A stretch of 64,000 nt of DNA from Mytilus californianus (lineage: Eukaryota): the NCBI RefSeq assembly GCF_021869535.1, contig NW_026262723.1, positions 34,100,001 to 34,164,000 of the forward strand, given 5' to 3'. Under the pieces are notes generated by a model, which was given only the letters and a program-made list of their open reading frames with translations, was not told the DNA's origin and ran no database searches. Shown one piece after another: positions 17,125 through 30,760 of this stretch. Position 1 is the first letter of the stretch. Each line of letters starts with the position of its first letter. Made by a program: the position numbers and the translations under genes.

Positions 17125-18404
17125 GTAAGTAAAAACACATGATTATTCATTGTTGCCTCTCGATTTTCCAAAAACTGCGATTAAACTTGCATATTATAAA
17201 CCTACGAGTATACTATTAGCTAAAAGCAAACGGTCATAATATCTTTAGATTTAAAGCTACAGTCCGCTGTATAAATGTACCTCTGTGATTTCTTGCAAAT
17301 TGAAATAAAATCAAAAGTCTTGAATGAGGAAATTTATGTAAACTTATGTCATTTTTAAATGAAACATCCTTAAATTAATAAATGATAGTTCGAACTGGAG
17401 ACTGCTTAGAAAAGTGACAAACATCTTTGGTCTTACTAGAGACGTATGACGACAAAACGTAGTGCATATAGAACAAATTGAAGTTTTGATCCTTATTTAG
17501 GATTGCAAGTTACTGTCCATACATCTTAATAGACCCATTGTCAAGCAGATAAACCATATAGCATTCGCTTCTTCGTTCCTTTCCCACCACGAGTATGTAC
17601 ATTGCTATATATGTTTGGCATTCACATGTTTTGGTTTGGTTTGAGCGTTACTGATGAAAGTTTATGCAGAGCGCTTCGGATGCACCAAATTAATAAAGTG
17701 CTATTTTCAGACTTTTCACCAACTACTACCATGTATTACAAACGAAAGTATTAGAGGTCAGACGTCAGAACAATACCGGACTGAAAAAGTGGTTGCCTTT
17801 TTTTTTTTATAACTGAATACGAACACAGTATGAGGGACTAAGCAATGGCAGATTATTGATATTATAATTGTCTAACAGCTTCAGACTGTAATTATTCAGT
17901 AAGATAATTCACACACACCGTGTGCACCCTTTATTGGAAGTCATGTCATTGAAAACTATGTAGTAGTATAGGGCAGTTTCCTGACAAAAGAGGAAATATA
18001 GAACAGCGACTCTTTTCACAAAAAATCTTACGACTAAAATTGATCGTAAGTTATACTGAAATGTGTATGACTTACGAGTATATTTACTGTTAAGATTTTT
18101 TGTGAAAATAGCCGCAGATCTTTTAACTTACAATAAAATAGAAAGATACCCGATGATAAATCAAAGAACCCATTAGTGTCTTAAGAAAAATACACGTTTC
18201 GATTTTTTTGCTGTTGACGTCTCTGTACTAACATTGTGATATAGATTGACATCGTGTCTCATATCTCAACATTATCCCGAGGTAAAAGTGATGTTAAAGA
18301 GAAAAGTAAATGTGTATGAGTTTGTATTTGCATGTGAAATATGGTACAATTTTTCTATTTTTGAATAATCATATTATTTCTTGTTTTAATACTCATTATT
18401 TCAG

Positions 18405-18554
18405 GAACTTCAAACGCTGACTGGATAATTTATACACTTTGTATTTCTAGTTGTTTCTTTCTTACTGGCTTTGGTCACTTGTTTCGTACATACAGAAAGC
18501 GACGATCACTTAAAGTAAGAATCATCAATGAAAAGGTTGTCCCAGAACCTTTAA
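18405..18554 (+). CDS. Gene B terminal exon 'a', 5' part: transmembrane segment (G)TSNADWIIYTLCISSCFFLTGFGHLFRTYRKRRSLKVRIINEKVVPEPL; interrupted by the retroelement
   Basis: TTTCAG acceptor, phase 1. A hydrophobic TM is followed by a basic stop-transfer RKRR. Aligns with 29805 onward. Read-through into the insertion reaches TAA at 18599-18601. Confidence 0.85.
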
Positions 18555-18965
18555 TTGCAATACTCATAGAAGAAGACCCTATATTAATACTGAACGAATA
18601 ACAATGAGATGAAGAACAACGATCAAGAGTTGTTGACGTATTTTCTAAACTATGTTGAAGTTCTTCCTTTAATCACAAAGTGATTACAAATTGTTCTAGA
18701 GTTGTCTCTCTTTGTCTGTTGTTAATTGTAATTCACAAATACCAAAATTAAAATACTACAGACTTTCTGTATATTATACTCATTTGTGTAGAGGTTCCAT
18801 CCTCTGTTTTTCCTTTATAACTTTTACAACTTATACAAAAACAATCATTCTAATTACACATACATTTTATTACACCAACTTGTATTTACATTTCCATGAC
18901 TAGAATATACATTTTTACTTTGTGGCATTACTTTGGCTACAGAGTATTCTATAATATTTTGTTGA

Positions 18966-19364
18966 GGCGCCAGGGTGACTACCGATTACCTATACACAAT
19001 GGCTATCAGCTGACCTATGTTGACATAGTGTCATAAAACCCCTGGTAGTTAAACACGGTTACACCACCACCTACCATGGGGAGTGACCGGGGAAAACACT
19101 CGTATTACCAATGCTCCAGTTATTAGTGCCCCACCTGTTGGCAGGTGTAGGCCTCCCCTCTATAAGATGAGGTGGATGAGGTCCCAGAGTTACCCATCTG
19201 TAGACCCCACCGTTACCACTAACCACATTTTCCAAACCTGCAAATTGTAGAACTTGTCAGGCCCAGAGCAAGGGCCGAGTGAAATAATCCCCCAATCACT
19301 ACCAGTCTCCCTGGACCGCCACATGAGAGCCCAAGTCAGCTACCAAATCTGACTTGGGTTCTCA
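18966..19364 (-). ncRNA. Candidate structured RNA domain in the 3' non-coding region of the YR retrotransposon
   Basis: GC-rich island with a long-range closing helix (18966-18980 with 19304-19320), several internal hairpins and a 16-bp hairpin at 19324-19364. Pairings were found by eye, and function is unknown. Confidence 0.55.
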
Positions 19365-19380
19365 CCTCCACAAATTTACA

Positions 19381-19977
19381 TTATTGAAGCATTGGAAAAG
19401 TTGTTGTGCGTAGGAAAGACTCAACCCCTCCTTGTATATTATTTAAGAAAACCTGATTTCCAGTTTGTGATAAATGAGTTCCATCTGTTCTGTATAAAGA
19501 CCCTTCACTTGCCCTAATGTTCTCATGTAAAATAGCTTTCCCCCCATTTTCTATTACAAAGTTTTTGACCACTGAATTCACTCTTTTTCTCTTCTGTTCG
19601 ATTATTGCACCCGCATTCAAGGGTGCAAAATGCCAGTATCTGCGCTGTAGCATTGAAGACCATATTATAATAACATTTTTAAATAAAGCCTGGTAACGTA
19701 GGATAGAACATTTTACATTTTCAATTAAACTATTCCCTGTCAATTCTAAATCTGTCAAATCATTAGCTCCACAGTGAATAATAATAAAATTAGGAGAAGG
19801 TAAAAATTTTCTTTTTGCATCCAGTACGGAGTCTAAATCTTTAATCTGTAAACCAGGTTGCCCAATCCAGTATGTTGTAACACCTTTGGACTCCCAGGTT
19901 GGTCCTTCCATATTTCTTCGCCTCTACATTGGCCCAATGAACAAGGGAACTTCCAACAATCCATAAAATCTTGGGAC
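19381..19977 (-). pseudogene. SGNH/GDSL-family hydrolase of the retroelement (frameshifted near 19890-19912)
   Basis: Block I WIVGSSL lies upstream in a different frame from the 176-aa ORF, which carries block II GQPG, block III HCGANDL and block V DGTH. Confidence 0.85.
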
Positions 19978-20011
19978 CTGTTAAAACTTGTAGCTTGTTA
20001 GCCTTTTGAAA

Positions 20012-21016
20012 CTAGAAAAATTGCAACCTAATATAGCGAGAATAAGCATGCGATTTCCATCTGCCTAATTTCATAATTACCTCCTCTGAGACCCCCTGCC
20101 TGGCTAGTTCCGTGGCTCCCTCAATTCTAAAACTATGTGACCTAAAATGACCTTTACTAATATGAAGAAAATGTGAAGCCTTTTCCAGTATACTGCTGAA
20201 TTGGTATCTAGTTAAAGGCATACCATTATAATGAATAAAGAAATCTTTATTATTACAGGTAGGTCGTACCTTTAAGTATTCGTTCGTGAGTTGTATCGGA
20301 CAGTAGTTTTTTCTGTTCTCAGGTATCAATAAAGTAACGGACTTTCCCTTTTGGTCAGTTTTTGACCACCTTACCCTTAGCTCCAGGACTTTTTTCTTAA
20401 CTAAAATATCAGAAATTGTTAAGTTGGAGCCATTTATAACAGACTTAGTTTTTGAAGTAGTGATTTCCCCTACCCTTAGCAAACCAAAGAAGGCAACTGA
20501 AAAAACTACTGAAAATAAAGCAGCTTCATATTTATTCTTACATACTTTATCTAAACAACCTATCATATCTGCTAACAATTGCACTGTAATTGGTGCTCTA
20601 ATGTCATTACGTTTCCCTCCTTGAATTCTTTTTATTCCTTCTAATGCCTTGCCAATTATAAAGAATTTTGTAGTATCCTGTATGCCTTGTATTTTATGAT
20701 GGTATGAAACTCCTGATATATAAGATGATATGGTACCCCCAGAAAGGCCTTGTACTGACAAAAAAGCTATGAAATTTAGCAAATCATTGACTGGCACTGG
20801 CCAATGCTGTTTCAATTTGTAAGATGATCTAAAATTACAAAGTTTCGACAGAGCCAAATTGTATGATTTTTGTGTATTTTTGGACACACCTTGATTGACA
20901 ATATAATCCGCCTCCTGACTTAAATGTTCCAGATCTGTGTTGGAATTTTGGTTGGCCACTGGTCTGCTTCTGGAGCTAGGCTTCTGAACTTCCCCCACTG
21001 AGAACGAGAAAGACAA
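20012..21016 (-). CDS. Tyrosine recombinase (phage-integrase family), 334 aa, frame intact
   Basis: Catalytic motifs GLLRVGE (R), SKTDQ (K), HSFR (H-x-x-R), LGRW and YSRYIR (Y). Overlaps the RNase H 3' end, as is usual in DIRS-order elements. Confidence 0.95.
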   Translation of the reverse strand: MSFSFSVGEVQKPSSRSRPVANQNSNTDLEHLSQEADYIVNQGVSKNTQKSYNLALSKLCNFRSSYKLKQHWPVPVNDLLNFIAFLSVQGLSGGTISSYISGVSYHHKIQGIQDTTKFFIIGKALEGIKRIQGGKRNDIRAPITVQLLADMIGCLDKVCKNKYEAALFSVVFSVAFFGLLRVGEITTSKTKSVINGSNLTISDILVKKKVLELRVRWSKTDQKGKSVTLLIPENRKNYCPIQLTNEYLKVRPTCNNKDFFIHYNGMPLTRYQFSSILEKASHFLHISKGHFRSHSFRIEGATELARQGVSEEVIMKLGRWKSHAYSRYIRLQFF

Positions 21017-22643
21017 TCAGCAATTTGGTTTTGTTTTGAAGGGATATAAATTGCCTTAACTAACGTATTGTTTTTTAAGTTCATTAAAACCATTTGTCTT
21101 ACTGAAGTCATAACTCTACTTGATTTGCTAGTTTTCATATTAATGATTTGAACAACCGCCTGATTATCAACATGAAAAATAACTTTTTTGTTAACAAAAT
21201 ATGATTCCCAGGACATAAGTGCTGCTACAACTGGAAACAACTCTAACAATGTCATATCTCTGGTGATTCCAGTTTCAACCCAATGTTTTGGCCATATGCC
21301 TTGGGCCCACTGACCTGCAAAATAGATCCCATACCCACCTTTGGACCCCCTGCACTATCTGTGAACAACTCTAATTTTTCATTTGAAACCCATACATTGT
21401 CGGTTATTACAGTGACACCATTGTATTGTTTTAAAAAGTCTAACCAAACTTCTAAATCTGCTTTCATCTGCTTGTTTACTCGAATTTTGTAATATGATTT
21501 TCTTACCCCGATTGTTGAATTTACGAGTCTGCGACAGAAGGTGCGGCCTGGAGCAACCACCTTACAAGCAAAATTCAGGAGCCCAAGAAGAGATTGCATA
21601 TCTTTAAGAGTTATTTTAGAACTGTCTAAGGTATCTCTGATTTTTTGTGAGAGTTTGACAAGTTTTTCATTTGGAAGCCGCATGATTAAATTCTGTGTAT
21701 CAAATTCTATACCCAAAAAAATGAGTAATGTAGTAGGCAAAGTAGTCTTGTCACTAGCAAGAGGAATACCTATTTTATCGCATACCTCTTGGAATATCTT
21801 CAAAGTATTGCCAACTTTTGATGTTTGGCTCGACTCGACAAAAAGAAAATCATCTAAATAATGGAGGATATGATCATTTCCGCTTTTTTGCTGTATTATC
21901 CAATGCAAAGCTTTTGCAAATTTCTCCCACAGGGCACAACTTATTGAGGCCCCCATTGGCATCATTTTATTAAGATAACAATCGCCCTGAAATTTTATCC
22001 CTAACAAGTCAAAATCCTGCGGGGCAATTGGCAACAAGCGAAAAGCCGCTTTTACATCACACTGACTTAAACGGGCAAATGTTTTGTGTCTATTAATCAA
22101 ACATGCTGCTTCGTCCACTGAACTGTACTGCACTGAACAATGATCTTTATCAATACAATCATTTATTGAATTATTCTCAGGATAGGATAAATGTTGAATA
22201 AGTCTAAAATCCCCATCCTTTTTTGGCACTAGCCCCATTGGTGATACCTGAAGTGTGGGAAAAGGCGGGTATCTGAAAGGACCAGCAATGCGACCAAGTT
22301 TAACTTCCTTCATTAATTTTTCTTTAAAAATGTTGGGTAGCTGTAATGCACATTTTAAATTGGAAATCTCCCTTGGTTCCCTAGAGCCAAAATATTTTAA
22401 TGAAAAACCATATTTGAAACCAGATATAATTTCATGTGCTACATTGTTATGTGGGTAAAATTCTAAATAATTTTTCAAGACCGATACTTTAACAGGAGTA
22501 TTTCCTAATGAATAAAAATTAATACTTTTTGTTACTTCTTCCTTGGGCCCGGTTATTACATTGGGCCTTTCTGTGTTTGCCACTGCATATTTCACATACA
22601 TGTTTAAACCTACAACGAGGGAAGTAGGGACAGTCATTACCAT
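20920..22643 (-). pseudogene. Reverse transcriptase + RNase H, split by a 1-nt frameshift near 21338-21342
   Basis: RT motifs PMGLVPKK, CDVKAAFR, MPMG, YLDD and FLGI. RNase H motifs FTDS, LLELFP, VDNQ and ADCLSR. The shifted frame continues GGYGIYFAGQWAQG...RDMTLLELFP into the 111-aa ORF. Confidence 0.93.
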
Positions 22644-23555
22644 TATTATAGTATTTACATGACATATTTACACTTCCACTAGTTACCTGTGATTGTTGAT
22701 GTGTTCTCGTGTTAGTGTTTGAAAGTGTAGCTGCATTTGAGTTATAATGACCACGATTTTGTGTATTTGTTCTATAACCCTGTGATTGCACTGACACATT
22801 GTTTTGTACTGTGGGAGATGTGATGTGTAATAGCCAATATTCACCGTGTATATTTCCCCAAGATAAATTTGGATTCTTTTCTATTTTTAGCCTAAATTGC
22901 TCGTCATAGGTGGCCCAGTTTTCTGACCTCGTTGCCGCTAATCTTATATCGCGCATATATTTTAACAATTCCTGTGCCCGTGTCCTGTATTTCTTAATGT
23001 AGACATTCATAAAAACCATAAATGCTGAAGTCCATTCATTTATGGACAAATAAACACCCGACGATCTTTTTTCAATGCAAATTTTCCCCCTTTTTAATTT
23101 CAAATCGCCCTCGTCAACCTCCTCAATTTCTTTTTGCGTTCTCAAAAGATAATGAAGCTCTATAAACTTTCCCTCCCAAATCTTTTCCTTAATTTTAAAA
23201 GGCACGTGTTCCCCTACTGTGTCATGAATGCTAGACTCTTGTGTCGGAGTGAAATCAATGGAAATATTTGCCATTTCAAAATTTTTGTGTGACGGGCGTG
23301 CCTAAAAAAGGGGAATGCCCGTGCATCCTCCTCCGACTCATTACCTGATGATATTTCAGCATTTTCTTCTGGTCCTTGGGTCTCGACGTGTCCCACCTCC
23401 TGTGTTTTCCTGACCATTCTTTTCCGTCCAACTCCGTCCTTCTTTTGAATGATTTCTTCGTTCCGCACTCCCTGTCCTTCTTTCCTGCTGGTCGTCCTCC
23501 TCTTCTTTCCAATGGCTCTTGATGGCGATCCCCTGGCATTTCTTTTGTTTGGCAT
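22519..23555 (-). pseudogene. Gag-like ORF1: basic N-terminus (MPNKRNARGS...), frameshift near 23270-23310, C-terminal Cys/His finger
   Basis: ORFs 23214-23555 and 22519-23274 overlap out of frame. The C-terminus CKYYNNGNDC...CRFKHVCEICSGKHRKAQC is typical of DIRS/Ngaro gag. Confidence 0.8.
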
Positions 23556-23789
23556 CTTTTCGTTTAAATAATTTAACTAATTTCTGCAGCACCTGCTTTG
23601 TTGTCGACAGCAAATTAACAAGTGCCCGATACGGGAATTCCAAAATTCAGATTCCACCTGAGAGCGCCATCTATGGCCATGCCAAATATGGCAATGAGCT
23701 AAAGGCTGCAACACCCACACACCCACACAAATATTTGATTGAATTAAACCAGATTATTGAAAATATAAAATTTTGATAATCTCTATTAA

Positions 23790-24508
23790 CGCCAAATATG
23801 GGCGACTTTAGTGAAGTAGACAAAACGCCAATAACATTTGTCATTACGGGTTCAAATGTTACACCCAAAGCATCTCATAATGAAACTATTAACTTTGTTT
23901 TTCATGAAAGACAATCTAATACAACATGTAATGAGGATGATGAAGCTGGTTATTTTGATCTGTATTTCGCGATGAACGAAGACGTCAATCACCAAGTAGA
24001 AAATCATCCATTGCGAAAGGAAAGCCTTTCAACTAGTTCTTTCAATACAAGCGTTGTTAGTCAAGATAATACAGAATTTCTTAAACCGCTTCAGGAATAC
24101 TGCCACGAAGATTCACATGCGTGTGAAGTATCCGTTACGGTTCATGAAAGACAATCTAATATAGCATGTAAGGAAGATGATAAAGATGATGAAGCTGGAT
24201 ATTTTGATCTTTATTTCGCCATGAAAGAAGACGTCAATCACCAAGTAGAAAATCATGCATTGCGAAAGGAAAGCCTTTCAACTAGTTCTTTCAACTCAAA
24301 CGTTGTTTGTCAAGATAATACAGAATTTCATAAACCGCTTCAGGGATACTGCCGAGAAGATTCACATGCGTGTGAAGTATCCGTTACGATTCATGAAAGA
24401 CAATCTAATACAGTTTATGATAAAACACTGCAGACCTCTATTCCATCGACATATCGAACTGGCAATTTACAGGATTGCACAAACAAGTATGCTGAATCGG
24501 AAAAATAA
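23790..24508 (+). CDS. Gene B terminal exon 'a', 3' part: cytoplasmic tail, separated from its TM by the insertion
   Basis: The 236-aa ORF aligns residue for residue with the tail at 29805-30760 (FSEVDKTPITF vs YDEVDENPLTF; SHNETI vs SHYETI; QDNT; EDSH) and is in frame with the left junction. Confidence 0.85.
23901..24411 (+). repeat. In-frame tandem duplication in the cytoplasmic tail (units of 240 and 249 bp)
   Basis: TTCATGAAAGACAATCTAATA recurs at 23901, 24141 and 24390. The protein unit HERQSN...EVSVT is repeated. Confidence 0.95.
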
Positions 24509-28880: not shown

Positions 28881-29804
28881 AAATTATTGTACAGATAATA
28901 GTCTGATATTGCTTTGACGCTGATGGCATTTTTTAGTAATTACTGGGACCGTTAGATGTCAGAACGCAGTACATAAATAATGCGAAAATTGTCGATCCAG
29001 ACTGAAGTTGGCCAGTTTCTGTCTTGAGATCGTGAGATATCCATTGTCAAGCAAATAACTCATATATCATTCGCTTCCTATAATAATTTTACTCCACGAA
29101 TATGTTCATTTTATTCACCGACTACCATCCTGTAGCACAGACAAACGTTTTATTCCGATACACCTTTAGTTTCTGGATCTATCCTTTCATTAATACTGCG
29201 TTATGTTATGTCATTCCTTGCACATGTATTTGCTGATGTAACTGTATCCAAAGCAGTCGTTTGTGCTAATGGGTGGTAGTCCGGGAATAAAAGTACATAT
29301 TTTTGGAGAAAAATGACTGAGATAGCGAATTATCATAAACGGTTTATCTGCTTAACCAAGAATCTTTTAAGTTATCTAGACATCTACTTGTTACTGCAAG
29401 TGTCTGGCAATTACCATGCTTTTTATGCACTGCGTTTTGACATCCAACGGTCCAAGCGATCCCTAAAAAGGCCGGCAGCTGTTTCGGACTGAAAAAAGAT
29501 ACCACTTTTTGGTCAATTGTGTTGTAAAAACTAAACGATATGGGAAGACTAGGCAATATCATTTTTTTTTAGATTGACCCTCTCTCACAATATAAAATAT
29601 AGTTTTAAACATTGTGTAATGTAATTTACCAACAGTGTTATTATTCAGTCAAACATTATCCACCAAGAGAAATGATGTGAAGGAAAATAAATTTGAAAAA
29701 AAATGTGCATAAGTGTGTTTTTGCATGTTAAATTAGGTACATCTTACTGTTTTAACTAATTATACATGTTACAACAGTTCTTGGTTTTTTTGTCATTATT
29801 GTAG

Positions 29805-30760
29805 GAACGTCAATATCGGAATGGATAATTTTGACACTATGTATAACTGGTTGTTTCATTGTGACTGGTGTTGGTTATTTGATTCGTACATACAAAAAAC
29901 GACTATCTTTTAAATTAAGAATCACAAATGAAGGAATGATGTTAGAACCCTTAGAACCTTCTCCGTATATTGGCGTCTATGATGAGGTCGATGAGAATCC
30001 ATTAACATTTAATAGGACAGGTTTAAACCTTACATTACAAGAATCTCATTACGAAACTATTGACTTGGTATCTCAAGAGAGACTATCTATTACAACCAGA
30101 TCTGAACATGGTGACACAGGAAACCTCGATCCATATTTCGCAAAAGAAGAGGATGAAAATCACCAATTACACGATCGAACATCACAAACAGAATGTAGTT
30201 CAACTAATTCGTCCAACTCAGACGCTGGGGATCAAGATAATACAGCATATAACAATCTATATCAACCACTTCAGGAGAATTGGCAAGACGATTCACATGG
30301 TTATGAAGTCCCTGTGATGGTTCATAAGTGTATAGAAAGTTCTTCAGAATTTGATGAAAATGCCACAAGTAATTCATATTATAATGTGTTTAAACCGTTG
30401 CCGAACGACTGGCATTTAAAAAGTCCAACATATGAAAACCAGAAGTCCTCAGAAACAAAAGCAGGAAATGATGAGCGATTACTGGTAGATGATTCTTCGT
30501 CTGTATTCAAAACTGGCAATATACATGATTACATTAACATGAATGCCGAATCTAATATATCAATGAACAATTGTGATGCAATGGAATCCTGCAAACCATT
30601 TGATCAAGACAAGATGAAGACAATTGAACAGAAATCGTTTCGTGGTGACTTTGATTCTAAGGAAGAATCAGTGAACACATGTTCAAACAATATATGTTGT
30701 TCTCAGGACGATAACCCTAGTAACTCTAATGCTTGTGATGACGCAAAATCATGTATTTAA
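29805..30760 (+). CDS. Terminal exon 'b': TM + tyrosine-motif-rich cytoplasmic tail, intact
   Basis: TTGTAG acceptor, phase 1; (G)TSISEWIILTLCITGCFIVTGVGYLIRTYKKR. Motifs YDEV, YETI, YNNLYQPL, YEVP, YYNV, YENQ and YINM. Joined to exons 8603-16743 it gives 1335 nt = 444 aa + stop. Confidence 0.85.

What the first reader, a model, noticed from the sequence alone, without database searches (positions are those of the whole stretch)
18551..23789. Precisely bounded YR retrotransposon with TTAA at both junctions but no detectable terminal repeats
Seen: the element interrupts a host exon, so both ends can be fixed. TTAA lies at 18551-18554 and 23786-23789, and removing the 5235 bp between them restores the frame (EPL-TPNMGDFSEVD), which aligns with the paralogous exon (EPLEPSPYIGVYDEVD). 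By eye I found no split direct repeats (A1..B1A2B2), no ITR/ICR and no TIR (inner ends TTGCAATAC vs TAGAGATTA). Established: Ngaro/PAT elements use split direct repeats and DIRS1 uses ITR+ICR to rebuild their ends before YR-mediated integration of a circle; Ngaro elements with an SGNH ORF are known. Inference: this may be a lineage that regenerates its ends differently, with TTAA as the recombination core rather than a transposase-type TSD.
Basis: partly seen in the sequence, partly recalled or inferred. Interest (0 to 1): 0.82.

Follow-up and report, generated by a model that had tools for sequence, protein, structure and literature searches.

The report
Repeat-less copy of a Ngaro-type retrotransposon
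This is one copy of an ordinary Ngaro-type tyrosine-recombinase retrotransposon whose sister copies in the same genome do carry the family's usual split direct repeats, so it is not a lineage that rebuilds its ends in a new way.

Summary
A 5,235-bp element lies on the minus strand at 18551-23785 inside a host exon. It encodes gag-like, RT, RNase H, YR and SGNH ORFs. TTAA sits at both junctions, this copy has no terminal repeats, and removing it restores the host frame.

The genome holds about 100 copies at 92-99% identity. About a quarter continue past the same 3' end, sharing the TTAA, into a 1,341-bp module. The module is A (first 224 bp of the element), X (346 unique bp) and B (last 766 bp). 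That gives A1-int-B1-A2-X-B2, the Ngaro/PAT/VIPER split-direct-repeat layout, with up to five modules in tandem.

Genome-wide, an A that follows a B end is followed by X 25 times and by coding sequence 0 times. None of 22 full-length 5' ends has a B upstream.

Repeat-less copies like this one are the majority. They are scattered in the copy tree, so they look like recurrent by-products of B1/B2 collapse.

The 3' TTAA belongs to the element. The 5' tetranucleotide comes from the target and is ATAA far more often than TTAA. TAA is near-invariant, matching the known 3-bp junction core of DIRS-like elements. One empty-site paralog shows insertion without a duplication.

Verdict: a new member of a known kind, of low to moderate interest.

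The parts
23786..23789 (.). Host target tetranucleotide (TTAA here) directly 5' of the element. Only TAA is shared with the element's own end.
   Evidence: In 28 independent insertions position -4 is A in 20, T in 6, C in 1 and G in 1, and TAA fills -3 to -1 in 24 of 28. The empty-site paralog shows that this side comes from the target.
23562..23785 (-). Repeat A (224 bp; 5' UTR or promoter region, starting TAGAGATTATC). It is the A1 of the family's split direct repeats.
   Evidence: In other copies the same 224 bp recur directly after the B end (A2). The A/X boundary also appears as a loose end at 23563 in laid contigs.
23214..23555 (-). Short basic ORF (113 aa) that begins 6 nt after the end of A and overlaps the gag-like ORF in another frame.
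   Evidence: ORF list. A length difference at 23296 in part of the other copies lies inside the overlap (table 4).
22519..23274 (-). gag-like ORF1 (251 aa) with a Cys/His knuckle-like motif. It has no Pfam match.
21252..22643 (-). Reverse transcriptase ORF (463 aa).
   Evidence: Pfam RVT_1, E = 1.6e-13.
20920..21255 (-). RNase H segment, read in a different frame from RT in this copy. The frames part at a G-run near 21345, which is 5 G here and 6 or 7 G in three other copies.
   Evidence: Pfam RVT_3, E = 9.5e-06. Alignment to three copies. Contigs of three runs show one more base at 21345 (table 4). An assembly error in the homopolymer cannot be excluded.
20012..21016 (-). Tyrosine recombinase ORF (334 aa). 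It overlaps the RNase H ORF, which leaves no room for a methyltransferase domain.
   Evidence: Pfam Phage_integrase, E = 4.3e-09, plus Phage_int_SAM_1 below its cut-off. The nearest Atlas clusters are eukaryotic Phage_integrase proteins, with Mollusca the commonest phylum.
19381..19911 (-). SGNH/GDSL hydrolase-like ORF (176 aa) downstream of the YR.
   Evidence: Weak Pfam Lipase_GDSL_2 and DUF459 matches below their cut-offs. The nearest Atlas clusters are GDSL-like proteins of Mollusca and Chordata.
18555..19320 (-). Repeat B (766 bp; 3' UTR, ending GTATTGCAA). It is the B1 of the family's split direct repeats. In this copy nothing follows it.
   Evidence: In other copies the same 766 bp recur after A2-X (B2). 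The whole genome holds 150 B ends, 35 of them followed by A.
18551..18554 (-). Element-borne terminal TTAA (the sense-strand 3' end is ...GTATTGCAATTAA). Its TAA is the junction core.
   Evidence: It is TTAA at every outer 3' end examined and at almost every internal B-A junction.

Best explanation
The insertion is one copy of a young, multi-copy Ngaro-type tyrosine-recombinase retrotransposon, probably in a mollusc genome. It reads gag-like, RT, RNase H, YR, SGNH. The family's full architecture is A1-coding-B1-A2-X-B2. A is 224 bp, B is 766 bp and X is a 346-bp spacer found only between A2 and B2. The internal B1-TTAA-A2 joint is a stored replica of the joint made when the element's two ends meet, which is the job of split direct repeats in Ngaro, PAT and VIPER. 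The window copy is the form with no A2-X-B2 module (A-coding-B). It arose when the two 766-bp B repeats collapsed into one. That could happen by template switching during reverse transcription, by resolution of a two-junction circle, or by recombination after insertion. All three routes give the same product. The copy therefore keeps the family's exact ends but lacks the internal end-joint. It also has its RT/RNase H frame split, so it is most likely a dead-end copy. Integration uses a 3-nt core: the element ends in ...CAATTAA and lands just after a target TAA, in an AAATAA-like context, without duplicating the target. The TTAA on both sides here is the shared TAA plus a fourth base that matches by chance. 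Shown: architecture, counts, junction statistics and one empty site. Inferred: the route of module loss, the circular intermediate and the role of the YR.
For: The domains were identified by Pfam. Other copies carry B1-TTAA-A2-X-B2. Layouts were mapped in three long loci and 26 independent 3' ends: 13 have A2-X-B2, 2 have A2 only, and 11 are repeat-less. Whole-genome pattern counts are 98 coding-B1 joints, 150 B ends and 35 B-TTAA-A joints. B-A followed by X occurs 25 times and B-A followed by coding sequence 0 times. Of 22 A-coding starts none is preceded by B; of 30 A-X, 25 are preceded by B. Fisher p = 3e-10. About 24 of the 98 coding-B1 joints have a B-A joint about 760 nt downstream, paired by hand from the coordinates. 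In a tree of 22 copies over 2.3 kb the repeat-less copies are scattered: 8 changes are needed against a shuffled mean of 7.0. An empty-site paralog (L048:2486-2610) shows that the flanks of a complete A1...B2 copy are contiguous, with no duplication or loss. For the junctions, the 3' end is always ...GCAATTAA, and the 5' flank has TAA in 24 of 28 and AA in 27 of 28 sites, with A enriched at -4 to -6. Literature: a 3-bp junction core without TSD in DIRS1-like elements (PMC3266345); Ngaro SDRs plus an SGNH ORF, and a Ngaro family without SDRs, in Xenopus (PMC9210276); solo AB repeats in Cafeteria Ngaros (PMC8547959); VIPER's SIRE equals A2 + about 30 bp of exclusive sequence + B2, and only 7 of 15 analysed VIPER copies have SDRs (PMC6681497).
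Against: Repeat-less copies are the majority, about three quarters of coding-B1 joints. That is a high share if they are only by-products. The tree is nearly a star (11 of 19 inner branches unresolved), so a repeat-less sub-lineage cannot be firmly excluded. B1 and B2 of one copy differ about as much as B repeats of different copies (5-17 against a mean of 16.5 substitutions), so no dating or directionality could be drawn. No transcript ends, circle junctions or empty alleles were recovered: only 29 RNA reads were laid and the DNA contigs were too short. RT/YR phylogeny against reference DIRS1, PAT, Ngaro and VIPER sequences was not done.
Confidence: 0.8

Rival explanations
1. One reading: the repeat-less A-coding-B unit is the functional element of a lineage that regenerates its ends without split repeats or an ICR, using TTAA as the recombination core.
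For: About three quarters of copies with a coding-B1 joint have no A2 after B. All have exactly the same ends. Repeat-less copies are as young as repeat-bearing ones, with terminal branches of 0.006-0.018.
Against: Repeat-bearing copies of the same family exist at 92-99% identity and are interleaved with the repeat-less ones in the tree. The 5' tetranucleotide is TTAA in only 6 of 28 sites. No mechanism is known by which a transcript from a unit-length copy could restore its own promoter-proximal and terminator-distal ends.
Confidence: 0.07
2. A-X-B is a separate non-autonomous element, SIRE-like. It integrates next to resident copies because the resident 3' end (CAATTAA) resembles the preferred target (AAATAA). 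The composite copies are then accidental tandems and the unit-length copy is the autonomous element.
For: About 5 of 30 A-X units are not preceded by a B end, so they may be solo units. Arrays of up to five units exist. The target consensus resembles the element's own 3' end.
Against: If B ends were targets for incoming circles, full-length units should land there too, since they outnumber X units at ordinary sites. Yet B-A-coding occurs 0 times against B-A-X 25 times, and no full-length 5' end has a unit upstream (p = 6e-13 and 3e-10). Solo A-X-B units and arrays are equally expected from A1/A2 recombination and unequal exchange.
Confidence: 0.1
3. The retroelement is nested inside a TTAA-targeting DNA transposon (piggyBac-like), whose ends are 18555-18960 and 23700-23785.
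For: TTAA lies at both junctions in this one copy.
Against: The ends are not inverted repeats. The 5' flank is TTAA in only 6 of 28 insertions. One empty site shows no duplication. A and B are always contiguous with the coding part or with X, never with an unrelated interior.
Confidence: 0.01

Closest known systems
Ngaro-like retrotransposons (for example Xenopus DIRS-53_XT; originally zebrafish DrNgaro)
   Same: The ORF order is gag-like, RT/RH, YR, then an extra SGNH-hydrolase ORF. There is no methyltransferase. The split direct repeats have A1 at the 5' end and B1-A2-B2 at the 3' end. Overlapping ORFs occur in both (PMC9210276).
   Different: B is much longer here (766 bp against 152 bp in DIRS-53_XT). 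A 346-bp unique spacer X separates A2 from B2. Extra A-X-B modules can be tandemly repeated, up to 5 times. The host is probably a mollusc. Most copies, including the window's, lack the 3' module. Precedent for that exists: DIRS-54_XT has no SDRs.
VIPER and its short derivative SIRE in Trypanosoma cruzi
   Same: SIRE is the first 185 bp of VIPER, about 30 bp of exclusive sequence, and the last 220 bp, and it corresponds to the A2-B2 region of VIPER's split direct repeats. Only 7 of 15 analysed VIPER copies carried the SDRs (PMC6681497). This is the same layout as A-X-B here, including solo units.
   Different: The spacer here is about ten times longer. The hosts are unrelated (kinetoplastid against animal). 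VIPER has no SGNH ORF.
DIRS1-like elements: integration through a 3-bp junction core
   Same: A trinucleotide at the circle junction matches an identical trinucleotide in the target, so the element is flanked by it on both sides and no target-site duplication is made (PMC3266345, PMC7192593). Here the trinucleotide is TAA.
   Different: DIRS1-like elements have inverted terminal repeats plus an ICR and a methyltransferase domain, and their trinucleotide is usually NTT. Here one insertion used TAT and three used CAA or GAA, so identity to the core is not strict.
Solo AB repeats of Cafeteria burkhardae Ngaros and solo LTRs
   Same: These are products of recombination between the element's own direct repeats (PMC8547959). 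Solo A-X-B units and the repeat-less A-coding-B copies here are the two expected outcomes.
   Different: Here the commoner product keeps the whole coding region (B1/B2 collapse) rather than losing it.

Membership tests
Ngaro superfamily (order DIRS) | Encodes RT/RNase H together with a tyrosine recombinase in the same orientation | tested here: met
   RVT_1, RVT_3 and Phage_integrase matches on consecutive minus-strand ORFs.
Ngaro superfamily (order DIRS) | No methyltransferase domain between RT/RH and YR | tested here: met
   No MT match was found in any ORF. The RNase H and YR ORFs overlap (20920-21255 and 20012-21016), which leaves no room for one.
Ngaro superfamily (order DIRS) | Split direct repeats, A1 at the 5' end and B1-A2-B2 downstream of the YR | tested here: met
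   Not present in the window copy. Present in sister copies as A1-int-B1-A2-X-B2, with a 346-bp spacer between A2 and B2.
Ngaro superfamily (order DIRS) | RT and YR group with reference Ngaro sequences in a phylogeny | not tested
The Atlas neighbours are unnamed eukaryotic YR clusters.
Ngaro superfamily (order DIRS) | Optional SGNH hydrolase ORF after the YR, as in amphibian and fish Ngaros | tested here: inconclusive
   The 176-aa ORF matches Lipase_GDSL_2 and DUF459 only below the Pfam cut-offs. Its nearest Atlas clusters are GDSL-like.
DIRS1-like | Inverted terminal repeats plus an internal complementary region | tested here: not met
   No terminal inverted repeats were found in the window copy. 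The repeats of sister copies are direct.
piggyBac-type TTAA-targeting DNA transposon | TTAA duplication on both sides and terminal inverted repeats | tested here: not met
   The 5' flank is TTAA in only 6 of 28 sites. One empty site shows no duplication. There are no TIRs.

The most novel reading that the evidence does not exclude
The repeat-less unit-length copies, the majority class, are not passive deletion products. They would be made on purpose, or move again, by the element's own recombinase. One route is resolution of a circle that carries two identical B-TTAA-A junctions into an A-coding-B circle and an A-X-B circle, each of which integrates separately. Another is DNA-level excision and reintegration of unit-length copies, Crypton-style, through their TAA cores.
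Probability: 0.1. Interest if true: 0.6.

Novelty: new member of a known kind. Interest (0 to 1): 0.28.

Why it matters
The finding was flagged as a possible new way for a YR retrotransposon to rebuild its ends. It is not that. The family uses the standard split-direct-repeat design, and this copy has simply lost the 3' module.

What remains useful is a clean, young, high-copy Ngaro family, with about 100 coding copies at 92-99% identity, in which all three structural classes coexist with exact junctions: full A1...B2 copies, repeat-less A-coding-B copies, and solo or arrayed A-X-B units. It also has a measurable target motif (AAATAA) and a no-duplication insertion signature.

That makes it a reasonable natural system for asking how SDR elements are copied and how often the repeats collapse. 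It does not change the current picture. For genome annotation, this copy disrupts one of two alternative TM-and-tail exons of a host receptor-like gene.

Tried and rejected
1. Reads. Contigs from three other individuals and one RNA run were laid on 18250-24150. No contig joined 18554 to 23790, so no empty allele was seen. The contigs were only 130-440 nt long and stopped before the junction, so this says nothing either way. Only 29 RNA reads were laid, which is too few to place transcript ends or a B-A joint.

2. Rfam at E <= 1 and tRNA scans of 18400-23900 found nothing. There is no known ribozyme or primer-tRNA gene in A or B.

3. I looked for fixed differences between B1 and B2 copies, to see whether both are inherited through the RNA. 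There are none beyond the boundary base.

4. B1/B2 divergence within a copy against divergence between copies was uninformative in a star-like family.

Later searches returned coordinates only. The class counts therefore rest on exact or near-exact pattern searches, and the pairing of coding-B1 joints with B-A joints was done by hand from those coordinates.

6. Flank-against-flank searching among the 66 loci held gave only one usable empty site.

7. Goodwin & Poulter 2004 (the Ngaro description) is not held in the library. Whether an A2-B2 spacer was reported there could not be checked.

8. The large protein searches, structure prediction and complex prediction were not used, because Pfam and the genomic copies settled the question.
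Full report
**Observation**

The window sequence has TTAA at 18551-18554 and at 23786-23789. Between them, on the minus strand, lie these ORFs:
- a short basic ORF (23555..23214)
- a gag-like ORF (23274..22519)
- RT (22643..21252)
- RNase H (21255..20920)
- a tyrosine recombinase (21016..20012)
- an SGNH/GDSL-like ORF (19911..19381)

Pfam gives RVT_1 (1.6e-13), RVT_3 (9.5e-06) and Phage_integrase (4.3e-09) with its SAM-like N-domain. The GDSL matches are weak and below the cut-offs. There is no methyltransferase, and the RNase H and YR ORFs overlap, so there is no room for one.

Joining 18554 to 23790 gives an open host frame (EKVVPEPLTPNMGDFSEVDKTP). The joined flanks align without a break to the paralogous exon at 29701-30325, at 69% identity over 629 bp, with only a 3-nt gap at the junction. 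A self-comparison of 18300-24100 at seed 8 found no terminal direct, split or inverted repeats.

**Other copies carry split direct repeats**

The window is C143:34100001-34164000 of a 1.65-Gb assembly. Searching that genome with the element's 3' 826 bp and its 5' 686 bp returned dozens of copies at 92-99% identity.

In three long loci a full copy is followed directly by more element sequence, with the TTAA shared. The order is:
- the first 224-228 bp of the element (A)
- 346 bp that occur nowhere in the window copy (X)
- the last 766-770 bp of the element (B)

This 1,341-bp A-X-B module occurs once at C101, twice in a variant form at C132, and five times in tandem at C79. Among 26 independent 3' ends, 13 have A2-X-B2, 2 have A2 followed by only 7-8 nt of X, and 11 end like the window copy. 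The structure A1-coding-B1-A2-X-B2 is the split-direct-repeat layout that defines Ngaro, PAT and VIPER elements (PMC4157794, PMC9210276). The only difference is the spacer between A2 and B2.

**Whole-genome counts**

Exact or near-exact pattern searches gave these counts:

| Pattern | Count |
|---|---|
| coding-to-B1 joints | 98 |
| B 3' ends | 150 |
| B-TTAA-A joints | 35 |
| B-TTAA-A followed by X | 25 |
| B-TTAA-A followed by the coding start | 0 |
| A followed by the coding start | 22, none preceded by a B end |
| A followed by X | 30, 25 preceded by a B end |

The contrast of 0 of 22 against 25 of 30 has Fisher p = 3e-10. Pairing the coordinates by hand, about 24 of the 98 coding-B1 joints have a B-A joint about 760 nt downstream. 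Among the joints that match the pattern perfectly the share is 16 of 49.

Three conclusions follow:
- The module always lies 3' of the coding unit and never 5' of it, and a coding unit never follows another unit. The composite is therefore an architecture, not an accidental tandem of two independent elements.
- Repeat-less copies like the window's are the majority class.
- A few A-X-B units (about 5) stand without an upstream B. These are solo units like the solo AB repeats reported for Cafeteria Ngaros (PMC8547959).

**How the repeat-less copies relate to the others**

A maximum-likelihood tree of 22 copies over 2.3 kb is close to a star. The repeat-less copies are scattered among the repeat-bearing ones: 8 changes of state are needed, against a shuffled mean of 7.0. 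The window copy sits in the youngest group together with repeat-bearing copies. Four rows with truncated or rearranged interiors (L007, L012, L025, L026) were left out.

B1 and B2 have no fixed differences. Within a copy they differ about as much as B repeats of different copies do, 5-17 substitutions against a mean of 16.5 (one older copy has 40). That is what a burst from a homogeneous source gives, and it does not discriminate between mechanisms. The five extra units at C79 differ by only 0-5 substitutions, so they are a recent local expansion.

I read the repeat-less copies as recurrent products of collapse of the two 766-bp B repeats. Three routes would give the same sequence, and none can be told apart here:
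- template switching during reverse transcription, which is frequent between long direct repeats in retroviral vectors (my own knowledge, not tested here)
- recombinase resolution of a circle that carries two identical junctions
- homologous recombination or unequal exchange after insertion, which would also produce the multi-unit arrays as reciprocal products

**Junctions and target**

Every outer 3' end reads ...GTATTGCAATTAA followed by unrelated sequence. Almost every internal joint reads GCAA-TTAA-TAGAG. At 28 independent insertions the four bases 5' of TAGAGATT behave as follows:

| Position | Result |
|---|---|
| -4 | A in 20 sites, T in 6, C in 1, G in 1 |
| -3 | T in 25 sites, C in 2, G in 1 |
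| -2 | A in 28 sites |
| -1 | A in 27 sites, T in 1 |

ATAA is by far the commonest tetranucleotide and TTAA occurs at 6 sites. The exceptions to TAA are ACAA (2), AGAA (1) and ATAT (1). TAA is thus present in 24 of 28 sites and AA in 27 of 28. A is also enriched at -5 and -6, so the target consensus is AAATAA against the element's own CAATTAA. The 3' flank shows no clear preference.

A paralogous, unoccupied copy of the sequence that flanks the C101 element was found by chance in locus L048. There the 5' and 3' flanks of the complete A1...B2 copy are contiguous (...AAATAT|TTGACAT...). The insertion is exactly TAGA...GCAATTAA, with no duplication and no loss. In that case the target trinucleotide was TAT.

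So the 3' TTAA belongs to the element, and the 5' tetranucleotide belongs to the target. The shared core is TAA, and the fourth matching base in the window copy is chance (T at -4 in 6 of 28 sites, no more than background). This is the pattern described for DIRS1-like elements: a 3-bp junction sequence recombining with an identical genomic trinucleotide, without a target-site duplication (PMC3266345; discussed in PMC7192593).

**State of the window copy**

At a G-run near 21345 the window copy has 5 G, where three other copies have 6 or 7. Contigs from three other individuals mostly show one more base there. As a result RT and RNase H are read in different frames in this copy. A homopolymer assembly error cannot be excluded. 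A second length difference, at 23296, is present in part of the copies and lies in the overlap of the first two ORFs. Together with the missing B1-A2 joint, this makes the window copy most likely a dead end. I built no consensus and did not single out any intact copy.

**Comparison with known systems**

- Xenopus Ngaro family DIRS-53_XT has the same four-ORF plan, including SGNH, with A of 236 bp and B of 152 bp. DIRS-54_XT has no detectable SDRs (PMC9210276).
- In Trypanosoma cruzi, SIRE is the first 185 bp of VIPER, about 30 bp of exclusive sequence, and the last 220 bp. It corresponds to VIPER's A2-B2 region, and only 7 of 15 analysed VIPER copies carried SDRs (PMC6681497). This is a direct precedent for A-X-B, for a spacer, and for many copies lacking the 3' module.

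The differences here are quantitative: a long B, a 346-bp spacer, and arrays of up to five modules. The nearest Atlas clusters of the YR and SGNH ORFs, and the labels of weakly matching RNA runs, point to a mollusc host. That is a lead, not a determination.

**What failed or could not be done**

- Laid contigs were too short to show an empty allele, and RNA coverage was 29 reads.
- Rfam and tRNA scans were blank.
- Further whole copies could not be fetched.
- The original Ngaro paper is not held.
- RT/YR phylogeny against reference families was not done.

**Verdict**

This is a repeat-less copy of a Ngaro-type family that does have split direct repeats, integrated through a TAA core as in other DIRS-order elements. 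It is a new member of a known kind, of low to moderate interest.

Noticed in passing
L007 (C99:81453548-81457370) and L020 (C104:364694-368515), just after A2: In two independent copies A2 is followed by only the first 7-8 nt of X (CCCGCC...) and then by unrelated, mutually different sequence. This may be a recurrent alternative 3' end of the inserted DNA, or a hotspot for later insertions.
   Followed up: partly
L054 (C132:71995732-71999411), 5' junction: The 5' flank reads ...GAGTATTGCAAGAA|TAGAG. About 12 nt identical to the very end of B sit upstream of A1 with GAA in place of TTAA, as if a short piece of the end-joint had been carried in.
   Followed up: no
L040/L033 (C101 copy) 5' end against L048:2546-2556: This copy starts TAGACATT instead of TAGAGATT. 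The odd C matches the base at the corresponding position of the target's right side (TTGACAT). That could be a trace of a mismatched overlap region wider than 3 nt, or chance.
   Followed up: partly
G000:C79:4964668-4976650 (L031/L032): One full copy is followed by five tandem A-X-B modules that differ by only 0-5 substitutions, so this is a recent local expansion.
   Followed up: yes
G000:C132:61195972-61204200 (L035/L036): A variant module has the second half of X replaced by the last ~180 bp of the coding-side 3' region before B, repeated twice. A1 of the same copy carries a ~170-bp insertion.
   Followed up: partly
G000:C132:86613802-86635470: This is a cluster with one full copy plus at least five further B ends and two X units within 22 kb. 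It is a local pile-up of the family.
   Followed up: no
L055/L060 (C2:50.63 and 51.06 Mb), L051/L052 (C132:7.56 and 8.08 Mb), L062/L063 (C2:38.6 and 38.9 Mb): These pairs of copies share 96-99% identical flanks. They are segmental duplications that post-date the insertions.
   Followed up: partly
window 18966-19364: The GC-rich (about 50% against about 33%) part of the 3' UTR noted by another reader is the 5' half of repeat B. It is therefore present twice or more in repeat-bearing copies. It has no Rfam match.
   Followed up: partly
window 18405-18554 + 23790-24508 and 29701-30325: The interrupted host exon and its paralog, 69% identical at the DNA level, look like alternative TM-and-tail exons. 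The insertion disables one of them on this haplotype.
   Followed up: partly
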